Below the pieces are notes generated by a model. It was not told the origin of the DNA. It was given only the letters and a program-made list of their open reading frames with translations, and did not search any database. A program made the translations under genes and the position numbers. DNA of 60,087 nt, the filler included, from Platydemus manokwari (lineage: Eukaryota): NCBI GenBank assembly GCA_037951405.1. It is 6 parts of 6 records of this genome, joined end to end, with 100 filler letters (N's around TTAATTAATTAA, not from the genome) between each part and the next. Parts side by side here need not be neighbours in the genome. Positions count along the whole stretch, not along the records: positions 49,686 to 60,087 come from JBBMOY011136661.1; 5 more parts are not named here. One strand, given 5' to 3'. Shown one piece after another: positions 49,686 through 60,087 of the stretch (positions are counted from its first letter, which is position 1; each line of letters starts with the position of its first letter).

Positions 49686-49740
<55 letters not shown>
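49686..49740. repeat. (AAT)n microsatellite at a contig edge
   Basis: About 18 perfect AAT units directly after the gap. Confidence 0.95.
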
Positions 49741-49742
<2 letters not shown>

Positions 49743-51969
49743 TTAATAATAATATCACGGTAATTATAATAATTTGGTTTCTATATCCGTAATCCTGCTC
49801 TACCTTTTAATGCAATTGAGATTTTGAGAAACTTATCTTGAGCCAAATGGAATAATATCCTCTCTTTTTCAGAAATAGTAATTTCGAAACAGTTATTATC
49901 GATTTATTTGTTTAATTAATTCGATTATTCTATTTGATAATGTGTTTATGGACATTTATTTTTCAAATGAACGGTGGGTAGTGTAATTATCTTCAAAGAT
50001 ATCATTTATCAAATGGTTTCCTCTCAACTAAACAAAAGATCATTCACAATCATTATCAATAAATTTCAGAGTTCTCCAGATATCAATGGAAATAGTTCCA
50101 TTGTTTCATTTATTTTTATTTATAGCGGGGAAGCGATTAGAAATAGTTTTTGAATGATTTGATGGGTTTGAATAAATAAATAAATATTTTGTTTAATTAA
50201 ATGAAACAGTAACGCATAATTTGAAAGTATCTCTTCTGAGGAATTTCACGTTGAACCAAATAATCCGATAGGCTCAGACCAGATTTATCTATTGAGTTTA
50301 TGGGAAAAATATCAAGAAAATTTACAAAACACTGATTCTATTTACAAGATCAACCCGATACTTATGCCTTTGATAGGGAAATTTAAAGAAAACTCCAGAT
50401 TTTTACTCGTTTTCCTTTTGATAAAAAATGAAATCGTATTTTAAGATTATCTGATATTTCATATTTCAGAAAATAATGAATCATATCAATCTTTGAATTG
50501 AGCTTCATGCCACTTATCTCTAGGTACTATATTTGTCTGGATCGGGTAAGATTTTCAGTGTAAAACAAAGATATGAAGCGTATAGACGGAAGCTCCATTG
50601 AAAATATAATGTGAAGCATGTGACAAAAAATGATAGGAATACTTAGGGAGGCTATAGTATAGCAATAAAAGGATAGATACACACATGCTCGGAGAGCGCA
50701 TGTGCCAGTTGCCAATCATATGACTCCAAATTATTATCCTATAAATAGAATTCAATCGTCAATTGGCTCACACCAATAGCAGGCAACGAACATCAAGATA
50801 CGCCAATTTCATGGGCAATTTGAAAAAATCGCACCGAATCAAAAGCAAAGATGTTAGACAACATTTCAACACACAGGACAAATCTATAGAAGGAGTTGAA
50901 ACTCGAGAGCAACTGACAATCTTTAATTGGTATATAATTTCTATCGTCGTTTTTATCTTTCTGTTGCCAATCCCGTTGTAATCTGATAATCGACCTTTGC
51001 TTTTTTATATAACCCTCAGTTACGGTTCTGAGTGTTTTACATTGACGATTTGGTTTAAATTGTGCTAACGATTTCAAATTCGAATATTGCGCGTTAGTAA
51101 ATTATCTAACAAAAATAATAAAGACAACTTCAACTGTATTACAGAAATAGTACAAGACTTCCTCCCGTACTTGTAAATAACCTCCCCGATTCGAACATTT
51201 ATTGATTTGGTAAATATCGATTTTCATAATTTAATAATAATTAATTATATTATTTTAATAATAATTTTGAAAGTAATATCTATTATTATTACACGATTTC
51301 GGACAAAAACAGAAAAAAAAACAAATTCTACTTTAAAACCACGCGCGATTTAAATTAAATAAAGATCTGCGTATTATCAAACTAATCAACGCTTATTTAT
51401 ACAATAATAATTTTGATAATATCCCTGAAAATTTGAATTTAGAAGAAAACGGAGCTTTATCCAACCAATTGTGACAATCAATAAATTACAAAGGGAAATA
51501 TTGTTTCATCGAACTGATTAACATAATATCAAAATCGATGCTTGAACATTTTAATTTATTTTTTATGGTGATCACGATTGACCAAACCCAATATATTGTC
51601 AGATTGATTTTCCATCGCCAAACAAAACCGAACCAATAAATGATTCTAGGCAATTATATCAGTGAAACAATATTATTTTTCCTTCTACAAATTAATAGAG
51701 AAAAGATATTTTTTACTTTCGATTATTTATAACTGAGCAATCCATCGATTCGGCCATCTCGTGCCAGCATTTAATGCCAAAAATAAACCGTTAATTATAA
51801 CTTTTCCTTATTCTTATTATGAATAATATTTTTCGATAGCAGATTTTCGGTGAATTATAGATAAAATTTCAATTCTTCAATGGGGATAATAAAACCTGAA
51901 TTTAAAATTCCCACATCTTCCCTCTTTTTAAAAAATTTTTGTATCTTTTTACTCTATTTTTTATCTAAA

Positions 51970-52310
51970 TAAAAATCTCTAATTCTTCTATCTTTATATC
52001 TTCTTTACACATTCTCTACATTTTCTTTATATCTTCTCTATATCTTTTTAATATCTAATTTACATTTTATTTATATATTCTGTATAAAGTTTGAACATCT
52101 TCCGCCTTGTTTAATTCACAGTCATCGATCTTTCCACAATCGATTCCCAATGCGTGGTCGCCATGTCAACTACTACTTTTATATAAAAGACGCATCGCAA
52201 ACGAACTGAAAAGGCACGACAATAAATTATGTATTCAAATACAATTATCGAAGCCAATTAATATAATTTCATACAAAATTAAATATCTATAATTTACTTC
52301 AATTTTAAAT
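51970..52310 (-). repeat. Repeat family C, copy 3 (inverted)
   Basis: Its reverse complement aligns to 43965-44225. Confidence 0.8.
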
Positions 52311-52828
52311 TATCACAGAAACAATTTGTTTTAATTCGGAAAAATCGTTCACCAAATTTGACCACATTTCATTTAGTGAACCTAAAGTAAAAGATTGAGC
52401 AATATATTTTCGGGTTAATAATAAAATATTATACTACTTTAAAGATATCTAATAACAACAGTTAACGGTTAATATCTAGCTAGCCGATATCAAGAACATT
52501 GATTCTTCAAAAATCGATTCTTATTTTAATCAACATAAATATTTACTGATAAAATAATAAACAATTTTAATAATAATTTTACACAAGTACTAAGATTGTA
52601 CTCATGAATAATTTTTAAAATTCCAATTCACTCGGAGATCATGCAGAAAGTATAGCATCAAATACATGTATAGTTCTCTTCGATTCTAAATATTCAAGAA
52701 CTCATTGATTTCCCAAGTGAATAATTTACCAAGATAAAATTGGAAAGATTTCCTTTTCCATTATCGCTATTTCATCAACGGGTTATGAGAATGCATTTTA
52801 AAAGCAGCCAAAAAGGTTTAATAATCAG

Positions 52829-52829
<1 letters not shown>

Positions 52830-52863
<34 letters not shown>
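52830..52863. repeat. (ATT)n microsatellite
   Basis: About 11 ATT units. Confidence 0.9.
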
Positions 52864-53044
52864 CACATTTTTCATTATCGACATTAAGATAAATAAAAAC
52901 AATCGTCAGATTTTGTCAACAGAATTAGCGAAAAATATTCTATTTACAGATAGATATACAGCTCACATAAGGATTTATATTAATTGGATGAATGGAAACA
53001 CCGTAAGAAATATTTGCAACGATTCAGATATTTTATTTGTAGTA

Positions 53045-53930
53045 CAGGGTTGGTCAGAAGTGACATCCGAGTCAATGCATTTTTGAATACAAAAAACTAA
53101 AATTTATTGACAATAAACATGAAATCTTTTGCGACGAGGTGCCAGTAGTACTCGTACTGACTTTCAATTGTAATATTGATAGTTATAATTCCCGATTCGA
53201 GATTCCTTCATTTGAATTCTCCTCCTTTGCCATGTGACATAGCCAGATCAAAATCGTTATTCACTCATAGTTTTGCTTAAGTAGTCTCTGAAAATTATAA
53301 CCTGAACCCAAGATTCAATTTTATAGATTTCTTTGGTCGGTATAAGCCTTGCACGTTGCAAAGGTTCGATAGCAGATTATTATTAGTGAAAGATTTAAAT
53401 AACTTGACTATTAGAAAAATAGAGTTGTGTGAATCTCAAATTGAAAATGGTGCCCTCGCAATAATAGATAAAAATAATTCAATAATAAGAACCAATTTAT
53501 TATAATTTCTTTTCAAAATTTACAGCAAGTCTAAGTCAGGTCTCGTACTTCAACAAAATTTCGAGAAGCTAATAAAATGACACGATAAATAGGCTCAATC
53601 AATGCTTTGAATCAACAGATTTATGCAAATAACTTGTCAAGCCTTAGAAAAAATCCTGATTGTTGAAGTTGTGTTTGCTCATAGTTCATAGAATGAGCTT
53701 CACAAAATTTAGAAACTCCCAACGATGAATTTTATGATACGTAACTTTCACCTGAGACAATATCGTTCTCATTTTGTTTAATCATTAAAGAAAGATGATT
53801 ATGATATTCGTGCCAAATTCTCCCAGATGCCTCAGAAACCGTTTGAAATAATAGTGCATACCAGTGATCAAACAAATTTTAAATTAAATGGACGATTAAA
53901 ATCAGCATTAATTCCAGAACATTAGAATGA
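53045..53930 (+). mobile_element. Decayed Tc1/mariner-superfamily transposon (rosa/DD41D-like)
   Basis: TA followed by a CAGGGTTGGTCAGAAGT terminus at 53043-53061. Broken transposase FHLRQYRSHFV*SLKKDDYDIRAKF...VHTSDQTNFKLNG (53745-53892) resembles LHLxPYKxQxVQxLxxxDxxxRxxF...FSDEAxFxLNG. Confidence 0.7.
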
Positions 53931-54899
53931 ATTCAAATTTGATAAACTCATTCTTTATCGAGGGAAAATTGTGACTGACGAAATGTATTCCAGCAAGACA
54001 ATATCCATTTCAAATATTTTGCACGTGATTGGGTTCTTGATCACACATGTCGCTGTGGTCCTGTAAAATATCTTTCTCTCTCTTTATCTTACACATCTCG
54101 AGCATTTCCTTTGAAGTGATTTCGAAATTAAAGCTTTTACAGACAGTTTTTAATCATCTTAATTAAATAAATGAGATAAAATATCTTTAATTAATTATTT
54201 TAAACATTAATATTTTGCAGGTTTCAATCTGTTTTCAATAAAATACTGGCAGCTAATAGGGGTACTCAGAAAATAGGTTAGAGGATAAGAAATTCTTTCA
54301 CAGAAATCAAAGACACCTTGAACCTCTTTGTGAGCATATCTTTATCGAACCTCTAAATACATTGACAAAATCTGACAATATTTCAAGCACTCACTCTAAT
54401 TGTGTTCTGCGATGCATTGTTTCGTGTTATTATTCGTGTATTATTCAAATATCATATTATTTTATTATTAGAACTAAATAACTTTTGATTTATTGGCTAC
54501 TACTGATTCAGCGCGCTAACCAAAATATGTGAACTCTATTATGAAATCATGATTTATTATTATAATCACAATTTATTGACCCATAATCTTAAACATATTT
54601 CTGTTACGGAATTGTCCCGATAGATAACAAATACTAAGAATTTCAATAATAATTTTTAAAACAAAATTTCACATATTATTTCTAACAGTTTTAGTCTTCC
54701 CGTATGTGTTTGTTGATTGTTTAAAGAGTCTAAAAGGATTTTGAGATTGAAATTTCAGGTTTGATTATTCCATCCTCAACAGCTCTAAATTTTTTATGCC
54801 TATTAATAATTCCGAAACACTCAAAGTACAGAATGGATAACCGCAGAACAGTAATTATTCATAAATTGGTCTGAGGAATCCGAAAATCCATATTAAAAA

Positions 54900-55600
54900 A
54901 AACTTGTAACTCACAGTTTTTGAAAATATTTCATTGCAATTGTGATTTAATCATCTGCCTTGACTTCACCAGCTTGATTTCTTTTGATGAGCTAATGTTG
55001 TTATTTTGAAAAATATTAAAGAAATCAATAGAGCTATATTTGACCTCAACAGAAAAGACTCGTTGAAACTGAAAGATAAGTATCTCAAGAATAAGAATAA
55101 TTACCGAATGTTATCATAAACATGTATTGTGTGTTTACTTTGTGTTAAAAATTTTACTTTTCATTTGTCAGAGCTACCTGGAAACCTGACCATGAATCTA
55201 GTTGGAAAATGAAATTCTATCTCTTATGCATTTAGATGTTCGTAATTTTCTGTAGATATGCACCAATCGAAAATAATAATCCAATCAGATAGTTTTGATT
55301 GTACATCATGTCTTCCTATTTGAATACTGTTCCAATGGCTTCAATCAGCATTTTCAGTTGGTATTTTCTCATGTCCTACAGGTTTGATGTCTTTAAATAA
55401 CAAAAAAATTTTACAATAAAAATTTTAATGTCCAAAGAAATATTTTTTCTCCAATTAGTGCTTAAAAAAACTCGTTGAACTTTAAATTATCATAGCTCCC
55501 AGAACTGTTGATATGCAGCTATTGCCCTTTAATAAACATTTTATTGATCATACGGTTAGCATACAATGCGTAAATTGTAAAACAATTATAGCATTAATTT
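54900..55600 (-). mobile_element. Possible decayed pogo/Tc5-like transposase fragment
   Basis: Minus-strand FIFQLDSWSG (~55186-55215) and upstream LIGEK resemble pogo-type DDE motifs; many stops. Confidence 0.35.
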
Positions 55601-55881
55601 AATGTATCCAGACATTTATTTGAAAATCTAAGCACTTAAGCTTGAATTATTTCACTAATGCTGATTAATGCAAACCAATTCAATTTAATAATGGATTAAT
55701 CTCTTAATTCGTTTCTCATTTCATATATTTCTAAATATTAAAATTAGTGATAGATGTTCTATTATTTTTAATTTATTTGTATCCATAGCAATATAAAATT
55801 TCTATTTAAGGATTACATTGTTAAAGGGAAAACATAGGCCGATTTTCTAACGGAAGAAAATACATGGTGGATGTATTTAGA

Positions 55882-55882
<1 letters not shown>

Positions 55883-55933
<51 letters not shown>

Positions 55934-55953
55934 GTAATAATAATAATAATAAT
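55883..55953. repeat. (AAT)n microsatellite
   Basis: About 23 AAT units with one AGT interruption. Confidence 0.95.
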
Positions 55954-57241
55954 ATTAATTATTTCTAATTAAAGAAAATATAAATAAATTGAGCGCTAGG
56001 CAAAAGAATGTAAGCCAAGTAAAATTTAACTCTTATGAACAACTAAATATAGTTATAAGACATTATAGAATTGAAAAGGAAAAATTTTGTGAATTAGATG
56101 CAGTAATTTAGTATGAACAAGTGGCAAATAATAGAAACTACTCATATAAAATTAGTATTAAAAGTATAGCATTTCAGTGTAGCATAACCGTAATATTTAA
56201 ATGTAATAAACTTTTAGAGATTTTAACGAGAATATTACCGTAGAAGTTACCAGTGAATTAGAGTCGATTTTTGTTGTTTTTACTTTCTTTGCATTATAAC
56301 GATAATTGCGTAATCTCGTGACGTAATATTCTATTAAATTTAAAACATTTATTTAAATTAATATCGATGGTTTACCACTTAGAATTTTCCAATATGTCTC
56401 ATGCAGATACTTCCTGATTATTTGCTTGAACCATGTACCACTCTAATTAGCAAAATCTTATTGTTGTTTTATTTGTTTAAATTCCATTCATCCTAAATCA
56501 ATGTTTATTGGCAAAATACTGTCTCATGATATCTTGATCAGAGATATATCAAGACATAAATATATTTATTTCGGTTTAGTAAAGTTACAATCAGCCTGAT
56601 TGCAACAGAACTGAATCTACATGCAACAATCATCCCGAATTAAATAAACAAATTTTGGATATTTCAGGTTATTATTCCGGTAAAATCGCCTTCATATGTT
56701 TTACTGAAGTCTTTTAGCACCAAAAAGAACTAAAATAAAGCTTTCCAACTCAAACATTGTTTAATTAATTTAACCCCAATTATACTTTTGATATGTTACG
56801 GTTTGGATTATGGAACGGCAAAGACCACTAATATTAAATCTAGGCTTTCATTCGTCTTAAAATTTTCTTTTCTCTCAATTAATAATTTAATCTTAATTTT
56901 TTCACTCCTTTGCTACAAGTATTTCGATAGCCTTTTTAATTTTTATAATTATCATTCTTAACGTATTTTCTCTAAAAATTTAAACACAATATTTACACAA
57001 ACTTGATTTTTAGAAAAACAACATCAAAATGGTATTCTGTTATAATCACAAAAAATTAAAATTTTGAAATCATGGAATATAAAAGTTAATAAAAAGTTTT
57101 ACAATTATAAATGACTCGTTATGATAATATATGAACAATTATGAGAACAATAAAAGATTGTGTACTAAAATTAGAAAGCACCAAAACAATCAATGATGAA
57201 AAATTTATTCTAAGAAATTGATGCTAACACATTTATTGGAA

Positions 57242-60087
57242 TTATTTGGAACTTGAAGGCCCATATGATGGTGTTGTTGGAGTGAATGATGGAGAAGTGG
57301 GAGAATAATTTAGTGATGTATTATCAGTTGCAGTAGACTGAGGACTGTATGGACCCAATGAATGATTATTTGTTACAGAATATGCAGGAGAAGCTCCGGA
57401 AGAATACCTCGGAGACATTGGGGAATAATTGGGTGAACTGGGGGAATATCTCGGAGAACTTGGAGAATAGTTTGGTGAACTTGGAGAATAATTGGGTGAC
57501 GAACGTAAAGATGGAGAATTTGGAGAGTAATTTGGTGAGCTTGGAGAATAACCCCGACTTAACGGAGATGCGTTAGAAGAATAATTTGGTGAATTAGGTG
57601 AATAGCCAACAGAGTTTGCATTATACGAAAGATTCGGGGAATATATGTTTTGCGAATTTGTCATTCCTGGAGAATTAGGTGTATATCTTGGGGATGTTGG
57701 CGTGTAAGATTTTTGTGAATGGTTTAATGTTGAAGGGCTATAACAAGGAGACGATGAATGGAATGTTGGTGTATTAGGATTATAAGCTGGAGAGGTTGGT
57801 GAATAATTTGGGCTTGAGGGGCTATACGATGGAGATGTTGGTGAAAAAGCAGGGCTCATTCGAGAATAACCTGGACTGGTTGGTGAGTAACTTGGACTTG
57901 TGGGGGAGTAACCAGGGCTTGTAGGTGAGTAACTGGGGCTAGTTGGTGAATACCCAGGGCTTTTAGGAGAGTAACTGGGACTCGTAGGAGAGTATCCAGG
58001 ACTTGTTGGTGAATAGCTTGGACTAGTAGGAGAATATCCAGGACTTGTAGGAGAGTAACCAGGACTGGTTGGTGAGTAACTTGGACTTGTTGGTGAATAA
58101 CCTGGACTTGTTGGTGAGTAGCCAGGACTTGTCCCAGCATAACCGGGGCTAGTAGGCGAGTAGCTAGGACTTGTTGGAGAATAGCCTTGACTTGCAGCCC
58201 CACGAGGTGGTGAAGATGATGAAAATCCTGGACTTGCTGGACTGTATCCTGGACTGGATGCTGGAGAATAACCAGGGCTTGCAAGAGTCGGGCTTAGTGG
58301 ATTCATTCTGGGTGATTGTAAACCAAAATGATAGTCATTAGGAGTTTTTGGACTGAGCATTGGGCTAAATCCAATTGCAGGACTCGGTGACATACCCATT
58401 TCAGAAAATGCACTAGGTGAAAATGCTGCAGAAAAGTTACTAGAGCCTGGGGAGAAGCTGAATGGTGATGGACTCCACTGTGATAATTGCGGAGAGAATG
58501 CATTCATTGGCGTAGCTCCGCCTACCATGTACAAATTTTGAGCTACACCACTCATCATGGGCAAACTTTGGGCTTCGTTACATTTTCCGAAGTCCATTAA
58601 AATATCGAAACACCCAGTTCCCATTCTCGCCAATTGGCCTAACATAATTGATTCAGAAACACCTTTTACCGGATCGTTCTCTGCATGGATTCCAGCTTCC
58701 ATTAAAATATCAACCGTCTCTTCAAATGAAGAACGAGCAAGAACCCCAGTTTCCTGTCTGTTTATACCATGTCTATCAATTGACATCAAGAATCCTTTAT
58801 TAGTCATTATTTCACACAATAAAGCCAGATGTCGATAATTTACATATGAACCGTCGAATGAAATGACTGTTACCATCTCAGTTTCAATGGCTTTCCGAGC
58901 TGCTTCAATACCCAAAGTTTCAAAAATTTCAGTTATGTGATTACTAGTGGTGTTGACAGAATCCACATGTCTTTCACCTAATACTTTCAATAAGCATGTT
59001 CCATCGGTTTCTAAAATCCATTCGGAAATCTTTTCTAATTCACCTTCACTGTTAATAATGACTCGCTTTCTATCATCAGTTTTCGGATGTGAGAGATAGA
59101 CTTTAGAGATTTGAGGAATTCCTTGTAAACATATCTCATCTAGTATCAAATTTTCAACCGACTCTAAATATTTTCGATCTTCCAACTGGGCCGTATCTTC
59201 TTTTTTACCGTCATCTTTCTTTAACCTCCGTATTCTAAGAACTAAATTTAGTTTCTCATCAGGAATGTGGCAAATGATATCATTGTCGAAGTATTCAGTA
59301 ACTTTTTTAGCAATTTTTTGTAAGGTCAATTTTTTCACAATTATTTTCTTTCTGTTTAAAACAATTCTCAACACATATGGACTTATATTCTCAATGTCGA
59401 AATCAGGGAATTCGTAATATGTTCTTACCCATTCTCGATCATTTTCAATAACCGAATTCTCAGGATCAGGATCATAATATATTTCGGATTTCGAAGCGAG
59501 ACTTCTCAGCGTAGTGCGTTCTAAATTGGTGGCAATACTCTTTGCTTTTTCCACATCGTTAGCAGCATTTCCAATCAATCGAATTGTTAATGACGGAGTT
59601 TTAGGATTTTTACTGACATTGATGATTTCTTTCAATCTCGGTACACCGAGTGTTACGTTTTTGGCAGACATACCAGTAAAATGAGGCGCGTTCAATGTCC
59701 TCTGAGTAGCAGGTTCACCCAAACTTTGTGCAGCCAATGATCCAACCATTTCACCGGGATGAACAATGGCTTTATAAAAATTACTTTCAATCTCACCAAC
59801 AACCCAATCGAGTGCTTCAGTATTCAAACGGTAATCATCAATGACTTTTTTTGCACACAAATTGCTACGAATAAGACAGCAAAGCAACATTTTTGCATTT
59901 TCATTTGCGCATTTTCCAATGGGATCATCACCTTTTACAATAACTAGTTTGTCACACAATGCATTCACTTTCCTAACGATGTCATTTGGACGGATATCAG
60001 TTTTTTTTAAAAGATCAATTTTGAATATCTTTTGTGCATTCCAAACGAGCCTTTGAATATTGCAAGGTAATGCGACTCTTCCATCAC
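57242..60087 (-). CDS. RPB1: RNA polymerase II largest subunit (RPB1/POLR2A family), 5'-partial, single uninterrupted exon of at least 947 codons including the CTD; divergent trigger loop
   Basis: The frame is open from 60085 (DGRVALPCNIQRLVWNAQKIF) to TAA at 57242. Motifs: PGEMVGSLAAQSLGEPATQ, NVTLGVPRLKEIIN, EWILETDG, LGIEAAR, FDGSYVNYRHLALLC, RHGINR, SFEETV, GVSE, GQLA..GTG, then YSPTSPS heptads. Confidence 0.98.
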   Translation of the reverse strand, partial: DGRVALPCNIQRLVWNAQKIFKIDLLKKTDIRPNDIVRKVNALCDKLVIVKGDDPIGKCANENAKMLLCCLIRSNLCAKKVIDDYRLNTEALDWVVGEIESNFYKAIVHPGEMVGSLAAQSLGEPATQRTLNAPHFTGMSAKNVTLGVPRLKEIINVSKNPKTPSLTIRLIGNAANDVEKAKSIATNLERTTLRSLASKSEIYYDPDPENSVIENDREWVRTYYEFPDFDIENISPYVLRIVLNRKKIIVKKLTLQKIAKKVTEYFDNDIICHIPDEKLNLVLRIRRLKKDDGKKEDTAQLEDRKYLESVENLILDEICLQGIPQISKVYLSHPKTDDRKRVIINSEGELEKISEWILETDGTCLLKVLGERHVDSVNTTSNHITEIFETLGIEAARKAIETEMVTVISFDGSYVNYRHLALLCEIMTNKGFLMSIDRHGINRQETGVLARSSFEETVDILMEAGIHAENDPVKGVSESIMLGQLARMGTGCFDILMDFGKCNEAQSLPMMSGVAQNLYMVGGATPMNAFSPQLSQWSPSPFSFSPGSSNFSAAFSPSAFSEMGMSPSPAIGFSPMLSPKTPNDYHFGLQSPRMNPLSPTLASPGYSPASSPGYSPASPGFSSSSPPRGAASQGYSPTSPSYSPTSPGYAGTSPGYSPTSPGYSPTSPSYSPTSPGYSPTSPGYSPTSPSYSPTSPGYSPTSPSYSPKSPGYSPTSPSYSPTSPGYSPTSPSYSPTSPGYSRMSPAFSPTSPSYSPSSPNYSPTSPAYNPNTPTFHSSSPCYSPSTLNHSQKSYTPTSPRYTPNSPGMTNSQNIYSPNLSYNANSVGYSPNSPNYSSNASPLSRGYSPSSPNYSPNSPSLRSSPNYSPSSPNYSPSSPRYSPSSPNYSPMSPRYSSGASPAYSVTNNHSLGPYSPQSTATDNTSLNYSPTSPSFTPTTPSYGPSSSK
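57722..58183 (-). repeat. CTD core: 22 contiguous 21-bp heptad units within RPB1
   Basis: 6 exact YSPTSPS, 7 YSPTSPG, and variants; further scattered heptads continue to the C-terminus. Confidence 0.95.

What the first reader, a model, noticed from the sequence alone, without database searches (positions are those of the whole stretch)
59625..59725. Candidate specialised RNA polymerase II: remodelled catalytic trigger loop in an intact, CTD-bearing RPB1
Seen (minus-strand codons 59704-59669): CAG AGG ACA TTG AAC GCG CCT CAT TTT ACT GGT ATG = QRTLNAPHFTGM, versus the near-invariant Pol II QMTLNTFH(F/Y)AGV. In yeast numbering this is M1079R, T1083A, F1084P, A1087T and V1089M, while Q1078, L1081, N1082, H1085, G1097 and E1103 are kept and the flanks (GEPATQ, NVTLGVPRLKEII) are canonical. 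Established: the trigger loop controls NTP selection, speed, fidelity, pausing and alpha-amanitin sensitivity. M1079 anchors the open loop in a hydrophobic pocket; from memory, substitutions at M1079 and F1084 alter yeast Pol II activity (verify). Plant Pol IV/V arose from Pol II with diverged trigger loops. Inference: five clustered changes that spare the NTP-contacting residues look selected rather than decayed. This suggests an animal RPB1 paralog forming a distinct polymerase with altered kinetics or fidelity, e.g. for germline, stem-cell or TE/small-RNA transcription. I know of no described animal equivalent but cannot search.
Basis: partly seen in the sequence, partly recalled or inferred. 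Interest (0 to 1): 0.9.

Follow-up and report, generated by a model that had tools for sequence, protein, structure and literature searches.

The report
Extra RPB1 copy, remodelled trigger loop
This is a real, open-reading extra copy of the gene for the largest RNA polymerase II subunit in which five residues of the normally invariant catalytic trigger loop are changed. A near-identical copy with the normal loop is more abundant in the same sequencing run, so it is a divergent paralog whose function remains untested.

Summary
Minus-strand codons 59704-59669 read QRTLNAPHFTGM inside an uninterrupted 947-codon ORF (57242-60087, cut by the piece's edge). The ORF carries Pfam Rpb1 domains 5, 6 and 7 and about 29 strict CTD heptads. 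None of roughly 350 Pol II homologs examined has R at 1079 or P at 1084.

In the only public run holding this stretch (X1, contigs), a second contig over about 59633-59756 differs at exactly six bases. Those six changes restore QMTLNTFHFAGV. That contig has depth 93; the window-type letters have depth 55. The window's own CTD and 3' flank sit at about 13x, while the conserved domain is covered by several 94-100% identical short contigs at 58-91x. A contig about 80% identical lies at 16x.

So this gene is not the only RPB1 in the sample. It is one member of a multi-copy or mixed RPB1 set. The intact ORF, and a linker unlike the abundant copy's, argue for continued constraint. Against that:
- nonsynonymous differences are frequent (21 against 15 synonymous codons);
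- the window copy has more derived states at conserved sites;
- A1087 substitutions are near-lethal in yeast;
- there are no RNA data;
- the N-terminal half is missing.

A specialised polymerase is plausible but unproven.

The parts
57242..60087 (-). C-terminal half of an RPB1 (Pol II largest subunit) gene. It is one uninterrupted reading frame of 947 codons plus a TAA stop at 57242-57244, and it is cut at the piece's edge (60087).
   Evidence: Pfam RNA_pol_Rpb1_5/6/7 and Rpb1_R. E about 1e-186 to mammalian RPB1 residues 974-1473.
59669..59704 (-). N-terminal arm of the trigger loop (nucleotide-interacting region, equivalent to yeast 1078-1089). It reads QRTLNAPHFTGM, i.e. M1079R, T1083A, F1084P, A1087T and V1089M.
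   Evidence: In run X1 the alternative letters at 59700, 59689, 59686, 59685, 59677 and 59671 restore the canonical residues.
59621..59668 (-). Trigger-loop tip and C-terminal arm, SAKNVTLGVPRLKEII. It is canonical: G1097, L1101 and E1103 are kept.
58247..58600 (-). Linker between the conserved core and the CTD. It is specific to this copy. The abundant sibling contig shows 13 differences in the 46 nt from 58496 to 58541 and stops matching the window below 58465.
   Evidence: (tables 3, 7).
57287..58246 (-). C-terminal domain (CTD): 29 strict Y-x-P-x-S/T-P-x heptads. YSPTSPS and YSPTSPG occur 7 times each, and the distal repeats are N-rich. Degenerate repeats are additional.
   Evidence: In run X1 this part and the 3' flank form one 2.6-kb contig at depth 12.9.

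Best explanation
The piece holds the 3' half of a genuine extra copy (paralog) of the RNA polymerase II largest-subunit gene. It belongs to a fast-evolving, unidentified animal lineage whose sample also holds a more abundant, nearly identical RPB1 with the canonical trigger loop, plus at least one more diverged RPB1-like sequence.

What is shown: the variant codons are real; a canonical sibling exists; the visible 947 codons are open; the CTD is retained; the NTP-contacting residues Q1078, L1081, N1082 and H1085 are kept.

What is inferred: the copy is still protein-coding and under constraint. Its product would assemble into a Pol II-like enzyme whose trigger-loop open/closed balance is shifted.
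- R at 1079 removes the hydrophobic anchor of the open loop. In yeast this type of change is gain-of-function.
- P at 1084 lies next to the catalytic His. T at 1087 sits in the tight Ala-Gly pocket. M at 1089 changes a residue whose variants are mostly loss-of-function in yeast. Together these should weaken the closed trigger-helix state.

The net result is probably a slower or otherwise kinetically altered enzyme acting beside the housekeeping Pol II, not a replacement for it.
For: The ORF and domains are established. The trigger loop is unique among about 350 homologs.

a canonical contig at about 59633-59756 (depth 93.3 of 148.2) differs only at the six positions that convert R>M, A>T, P>F, T>A and M>V (decoded). 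The remaining depth of 54.9 carries the window's letters.

the window's CTD, linker and 3' flank form a single contig at 12.9x, and the intergenic contig is at 11.6x. Short conserved-domain contigs 94-100% identical to the window are at 58-91x. A contig about 80% identical (1744 nt) is at 16.2x.

The six differences fall within 30 of 123 nt (scan P about 0.004). The linker is strongly diverged from the abundant copy, yet about 450 further codons including the CTD stay open.

Yeast literature: M1079 pocket variants are gain-of-function and M1079R is viable. Gain- and loss-of-function trigger-loop substitutions can suppress each other. Trigger-loop function depends strongly on context. A1087T occurs naturally in some protist Pol II, and K1079+M1089 occurs in an oomycete fragment.
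Against: - No RNA run holds the gene, so expression is unknown.
- The N-terminal half, with the metal-A site and bridge helix, is outside the piece.
- No ortholog or close relative of the variant was found in any database range or by metagenome pattern scans.
- In the subset of differences shown, 21 codons are nonsynonymous and 15 synonymous. That is very relaxed for RPB1.
- The window copy carries the derived state at 9 conserved sites against 2 for the sibling contigs.
- In yeast, substitutions at A1087 are almost universally lethal or severe and cannot be suppressed. P at 1084 was seen in no homolog.
- Depths are means over Logan contigs, which drop rare variants and mix shared and specific k-mers, so copy numbers are rough.
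- Run X1 may be the sample the assembly came from, so it is not independent support.
Confidence: 0.45

Rival explanations
1. This is a redundant, decaying duplicate. In a multi-copy RPB1 family this copy is released from constraint and is collecting damaging changes, including in the trigger loop, but has not yet acquired a stop or frameshift in the visible half. It makes no useful polymerase.
For: The ratio of nonsynonymous to synonymous differences against sibling contigs is high: 21 to 15 codons overall, and 11 to 9 in the conserved core (residues 1-500) outside the loop. The window copy carries 9 derived states at conserved sites against 2 for the siblings. It has 43 deviations at 216 conserved columns, the most of any sequence compared. 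A1087 and nucleotide-interacting-region substitutions are severely deleterious in yeast. All six changes being nonsynonymous has P about 0.25 under neutrality. No RNA evidence exists. The contig breaks inside the gene.
Against: An open frame of 947 codons persists in a genome of about 27% GC, where stop codons arise easily. The copy-specific linker and CTD are very different from the abundant copy's, yet remain open and heptad-periodic. All NTP-contacting residues are spared. The changes are concentrated in 30 nt with identical flanks (scan P about 0.004), which neutral decay does not predict.
Confidence: 0.3
2. This is the sole housekeeping RPB1 of its own genome. The canonical contigs in run X1 would then come from a closely related, more abundant organism, strain or subgenome in the same sample (pooled individuals, a hybrid or a cryptic species), not from a paralog.
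For: The depth is about 13x for the window-specific contigs against 58-93x for sibling contigs. Sibling contigs map only in the conserved domain, while the linker and flank do not match. This is what a related genome would show. The run's metadata are missing (kind '?').
Against: The window-type trigger-loop letters have depth of about 55, not 13. A stretch identical to the window (59173-59423) is at 69x. There are no synonymous differences in the 123-nt trigger-loop contig. A separate contig about 80% identical lies at 16x, close to the window's own depth, which suggests that about 13-16x is the single-copy level of one genome holding several RPB1 types. A sole Pol II with P1084 and T1087 would be unprecedented among about 350 homologs.
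Confidence: 0.12
3. The two loop types are alleles or haplotypes of one locus, and the window shows the rarer haplotype.
For: Nucleotide differences in the core run at 3-6% (records 3-5), which is compatible with very heterozygous invertebrates.
Against: The depths are far from 1:1. The linker stops matching altogether. At least three sequence types are seen. A heterozygous, dominant-negative trigger-loop allele would be costly: in yeast, substitutions in the nucleotide-interacting region show apparent dominance.
Confidence: 0.08
4. The variant is an assembly or sequencing artefact.
For: The piece is short and ends inside a region that is repeated within the sample.
Against: Contigs of a public run carry the window's letters at all six positions, at a depth of about 55.
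Confidence: 0.03

Closest known systems
Canonical metazoan RPB1 (POLR2A / ama-1)
   Same: The domain order Rpb1_6, Rpb1_5, Rpb1_7, linker and heptad CTD is the same. Identity to animal RPB1 over 500 residues is 56-62%. The trigger-loop flanks and the residues Q1078, L1081, N1082, H1085, G1097, L1101 and E1103 are kept.
   Different: Five trigger-loop substitutions are absent from every Pol II homolog compared. The branch is very long (0.81 against a median of 0.05). The sequence is intronless over 2.85 kb. It coexists with a canonical sibling.
Plant NRPD1/NRPE1 (largest subunits of Pol IV and Pol V). This comparison rests on background knowledge and was not tested here.
   Same: Both are duplicates of the Pol II largest subunit with a diverged trigger loop, coexisting with the housekeeping enzyme.
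   Different: The plant proteins have lost the heptad CTD, gained other C-terminal domains, and have much more eroded active-site elements. Here the CTD and NTP-contacting residues are kept and only five loop residues differ. There is no evidence of dedicated partner subunits.
Development-specific Pol II subunit paralogs of ciliates (Oxytricha RPB1/RPB2 paralogs, PMC5312943)
   Same: There are extra copies of core Pol II subunits beside the housekeeping ones.
   Different: These are from a different kingdom. That paper turned up only in the literature search; I did not read it or compare any sequences.
Yeast Rpb1 trigger-loop mutants (M1079R, F1084I, A1087V, V1089 variants)
   Same: The same positions are involved. 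M1079R is viable with transcription phenotypes. M1079 pocket variants and F1084I are gain-of-function. A1087V and most V1089 variants are loss-of-function.
   Different: These are laboratory single mutants in yeast. The natural five-fold combination has not been tested, and trigger-loop effects depend strongly on context.

Membership tests
RPB1 (Pol II largest subunit) | Pol II-type C-terminal core domains (Rpb1 domains 5, 6, 7) | tested here: met
   PF04998 3.8e-58, PF04992 1.8e-40, PF04990 4.7e-36. E about 1e-186 to mammalian RPB1, far better than to Pol I or Pol III subunits.
RPB1 (Pol II largest subunit) | Heptad-repeat CTD (YSPTSPS type) | tested here: met
   PF05001; 29 strict heptads at residues 614-933.
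RPB1 (Pol II largest subunit) | Canonical trigger loop QMTLNTFH(F/Y)AGV | tested here: not met
   five of twelve residues differ. The NTP-contacting Q, L, N and H are kept.
RPB1 (Pol II largest subunit) | Metal-A motif NADFDGD and bridge helix | not testable with these tools
   These lie upstream of 60087, outside the piece. No longer contig could be fetched.
RPB1 (Pol II largest subunit) | Expressed and assembled with RPB2 and the other subunits | not testable with these tools
   No RNA run holds the stretch.
Specialised Pol II-derived polymerase (Pol IV/V-like) | A duplicate that coexists with a canonical housekeeping copy in one genome | tested here: inconclusive
   One search shows a canonical sibling contig in the same run at higher depth. 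That both lie in one genome is inferred from depths and was not phased.
Specialised Pol II-derived polymerase (Pol IV/V-like) | Variant conserved in orthologs under purifying selection | tested here: not met
   No sequence with the variant loop, and none above 62% identity over the 500-residue core (short partial matches reach 81%), turned up. The lineage itself appears to be absent from the databases, so this is weak negative evidence.
Specialised Pol II-derived polymerase (Pol IV/V-like) | Loss of the heptad CTD, or a new C-terminal domain | tested here: not met
   The CTD is retained.

The most novel reading that the evidence does not exclude
An animal lineage has expanded RPB1 into a small gene family. 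One CTD-bearing member has a selectively remodelled trigger loop (R1079, A1083, P1084, T1087, M1089). It forms a second, kinetically distinct Pol II-like enzyme beside the housekeeping one. This would be an animal counterpart, at an early stage, of the plant Pol IV/V innovation.
Probability: 0.3. Interest if true: 0.85.

Novelty: new variant of a known kind. Interest (0 to 1): 0.6.

Why it matters
The N-terminal arm of the trigger loop is among the most invariant stretches in eukaryotic proteins, and it sets Pol II speed, fidelity and pausing. A natural, CTD-bearing RPB1 that changes five of these residues, spares the substrate contacts and sits beside a canonical copy would matter in two ways. 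It would be a ready-made experiment on how the loop can be re-tuned through combined gain- and loss-of-function changes. It would also be a candidate for a specialised animal polymerase; my literature search turned up none, and I know of none. If it proves to be a decaying duplicate, it still documents an unusual multi-copy state of a gene that is normally single-copy in animals.

Tried and rejected
- **Protein searches at three length ranges** and the exhaustive representative search gave no close relative. The best was 62% over 500 residues. The full-length protein of this organism, if above 1657 aa, could not be reached with a 947-aa query.
- **Exact-product look-ups** of the 947-aa and 442-aa partial products found nothing on record.
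- **Degenerate DNA patterns** for the variant loop in JGI metagenomes gave no matches.
- **Phylogenetic placement** failed through long-branch attraction: the sequence groups with a fungal and a mollusc outlier, so no taxon could be assigned.
- **Retrogene signs**: no poly(A) tract or obvious duplication follows the stop. The gene is intronless over 2.85 kb, but the intron state of the sibling is unknown.
- **Other genes in the piece**: Pfam on the eight ORFs of 57-94 aa in 49686-57241, Rfam and tRNA scans all found nothing.
- **The search of earlier findings** was not open.
- **Assembly error** is rejected, because run X1 contigs carry the variant letters.
- **Ciliate or other non-animal origin** is rejected. 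There are no in-frame TAA or TAG codons, the best matches are animal RPB1, and the CTD is canonical.
- **Structure prediction** was not run. A model of half a subunit, guided by canonical homologs, cannot speak to trigger-loop dynamics.
Full report
**What is there**

The piece (49686-60087) has 20-36% GC in its non-coding part. Its only recognisable gene is a minus-strand reading frame from the piece's edge at 60087 down to a TAA stop at 57242-57244. That is 947 codons with no stop or frameshift and no intron.

Pfam finds RNA_pol_Rpb1 domains 6, 5 and 7 and the Rpb1 C-terminal repeat. The first 495 residues align end to end with residues 974-1473 of mammalian RPB1 in solved Pol II structures (E about 1e-186). 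They align much less well with Pol I, Pol III, archaeal or bacterial subunits. Residues 614-933 hold 29 strict heptads. YSPTSPS and YSPTSPG occur seven times each, and the distal repeats are N-rich. So this is the C-terminal half of a Pol II largest-subunit gene with a CTD. The N-terminal half, with the metal-A site and bridge helix, lies beyond the piece and could not be fetched.

**The observation**

In the alignment to human RPB1 the paired residues are QMTLNTFHYAGV. With the 23-residue offset this gives yeast M1079R, T1083A, F1084P, A1087T and V1089M. Q1078, L1081, N1082, H1085, G1097, L1101 and E1103 are kept, and the flanks are canonical.

- Among 240 homologs from two searches, the core QMTLNTFH is present in about 238.
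- Among the 150 best 50%-identity cluster representatives from 1.84 billion proteins, no trigger loop has R at 1079 or P at 1084.
- Individual changes do occur in protists. T1087 appears in P0494, P0247 and P0263. K1079 with M1089 appears in a fragment from the oomycete Peronosclerospora sorghi.

**The key new result**

Only one public run holds the stretch: X1, kept as Logan contigs, with no metadata. Laying its contigs on 55000-60087 shows the following.

1. The window's CTD, linker and 3' flank form one 2.6-kb contig with a single difference at depth 12.9. The next intergenic contig is at 11.6.
2. In the conserved domain (58400-60087) the run holds many short contigs, 94-100% identical to the window, at depths of 58-91. 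One stretch identical to the window (59173-59423) is at 69, and a 5.6% different version of the same stretch is at 58.
3. A 1744-nt contig only about 80% identical lies at depth 16.
4. Over about 59633-59756, a contig of depth 93.3 (of 148.2 in all) differs from the window at only six bases: 59700, 59689, 59686, 59685, 59677 and 59671.

Decoding the six bases in point 4 gives AGG>ATG, GCG>ACG, CCT>TTT, ACT>GCT and ATG>GTG, which is exactly QMTLNTFHFAGV. The other 54.9 of depth carries the window's letters.

Two things follow. The variant is real in reads. A canonical sibling, with no synonymous difference in those 41 codons, is present and more abundant.

**What the sample structure means**

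Three unrelated contigs sit at 12-16x: the window's 3' part, the intergenic contig and the 80% paralog. Conserved-domain contigs are four to seven times deeper. The simplest reading is one genome at about 13-16x that holds several RPB1-type genes. Their cores are kept very similar, by recency or by gene conversion, while their linkers and flanks differ. This would also explain why the assembly contig breaks inside the gene.

Depths here are contig means that mix shared and specific k-mers, and Logan contigs drop rare variants, so copy numbers are rough. A mixture with a closely related, more abundant organism cannot be excluded. X1 may also be the assembly's own sample.

**Selected or decaying?**

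For constraint:
- The frame is open for 947 codons in a very AT-rich genome.
- The abundant sibling shows 13 differences in the 46 nt from 58496 to 58541 and stops matching the window below 58465. Yet the window's copy keeps about 450 further codons open with a periodic CTD.
- The six loop differences fall within 30 of 123 nt (scan P about 0.004).
- The substrate-contacting residues are spared.

Against:
- Six of six changes being nonsynonymous has P about 0.25 under neutrality.
- In the subset of differences the tool displayed (40 of 127), 21 codons are nonsynonymous and 15 synonymous. In the conserved core (residues 1-500) outside the loop the count is 11 against 9. This is very relaxed for RPB1.
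- At conserved columns the window copy carries the derived state nine times: the five loop residues plus H190R, I342V, F350L and E500G. The sibling contigs carry it twice, at K180I and E469A.
- Overall the protein deviates at 43 of 216 columns that are at least 95% conserved. That is more than any other sequence in the set, and it sits on a branch of 0.81 against a median of 0.05. Because sibling contigs are about 95% identical to it, much of this is probably lineage-wide.

**Likely mechanism (inferred)**

Yeast work gives the following.
- M1079 sits in a hydrophobic pocket that holds the loop open. Pocket variants are gain-of-function, and M1079R is viable with transcription phenotypes.
- F1084I is gain-of-function but switches sign in many backgrounds.
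- A1087 and G1088 fit a tight pocket in the closed state. Substitutions there are almost universally lethal or severe and cannot be suppressed.
- Most V1089 variants are loss-of-function.
- Gain- and loss-of-function changes can suppress one another, and trigger loops are strongly co-adapted to their enzyme.

The five-fold combination therefore looks like one change that destabilises the open state together with several that destabilise the closed state. If the protein is made and assembled, I expect a Pol II-like enzyme with altered, probably slower, nucleotide addition and different pausing or fidelity, working beside the canonical enzyme. Nothing here tests this.

**Comparison and novelty**

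By domains and CTD this is an RPB1. It fails the family's canonical trigger-loop feature at five positions. It resembles the origin of plant Pol IV/V in that a Pol II duplicate has a diverged loop, but it keeps the CTD and catalytic contacts. The literature search found RPB1 paralogs discussed only for ciliates, plants and fungi, not animals.

I could not name the organism. The best identities are to flatworm, nematode and arthropod RPB1 at 56-62%. No relative closer than that exists in any database range tried. No RNA run is available.

**Verdict**

The paralog reading is supported by a canonical sibling in the same run. Functional specialisation is plausible but unproven.

| Reading | My odds |
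|---|---|
| Constrained paralog with altered catalysis | about 45% |
| Decaying duplicate | about 30% |
| Sole RPB1 of a minor genome in a mixed sample | about 12% |
| Haplotype of one locus | about 8% |
| Artefact | about 3% |

Noticed in passing
Run X1 contig laid on window 59360-59676, with further blocks down to about 58864: A third RPB1-like sequence: a 1744-nt contig at depth 16.2, about 80% identical in blocks, with unaligned stretches between them. It has Val (GTG) at the V1089 codon, and its sequence over the rest of the trigger loop did not align at 80%. It may be an older paralog.
   Followed up: partly
window 58400-60087 against 55000-58400: In run X1 the conserved RPB1 core is covered by many 190-250-nt contigs at 58-91x, while the same gene's CTD and flank are at about 13x. 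The assembly piece itself ends inside this region. This points to a multi-copy or mixed RPB1 set and a repeat-induced contig break.
   Followed up: partly
window 57287-58246 (-): The proximal CTD repeats alternate between YSPTSPS and YSPTSPG (seven each). The distal repeats are N-rich (YSPSSPN, YSPNSPN). At the DNA level the array has periods of 21, 42 and 63 nt and only 71-78% matches, so it is not a recent expansion.
   Followed up: partly
window 49686-49754, 52829-52863, 55882-55959: There are long trinucleotide microsatellites: (ATA)23, (ATT)12 and (AAT)26. The rest of 49686-57241 has no Pfam, Rfam or tRNA match and looks like AT-rich intergenic DNA.
   Followed up: yes
proteins P0341, P0494, P0247, P0263 (not in the window): Natural Pol II-type trigger loops carry single changes seen here. 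K1079 with M1089 occurs in a fragment from the oomycete Peronosclerospora sorghi. T1087 occurs in three unnamed protist-like or metagenomic RPB1s. So A1087T is tolerated in some contexts, despite being near-lethal in yeast.
   Followed up: partly
50%-identity cluster representatives: About ten RPB1-like representatives have a loop of the type (M/L)TLNSVE(W/Y)NTE(V/I/L), which lacks the catalytic His. I did not identify them; they may be Pol II-derived specialised subunits of some other lineage.
   Followed up: no
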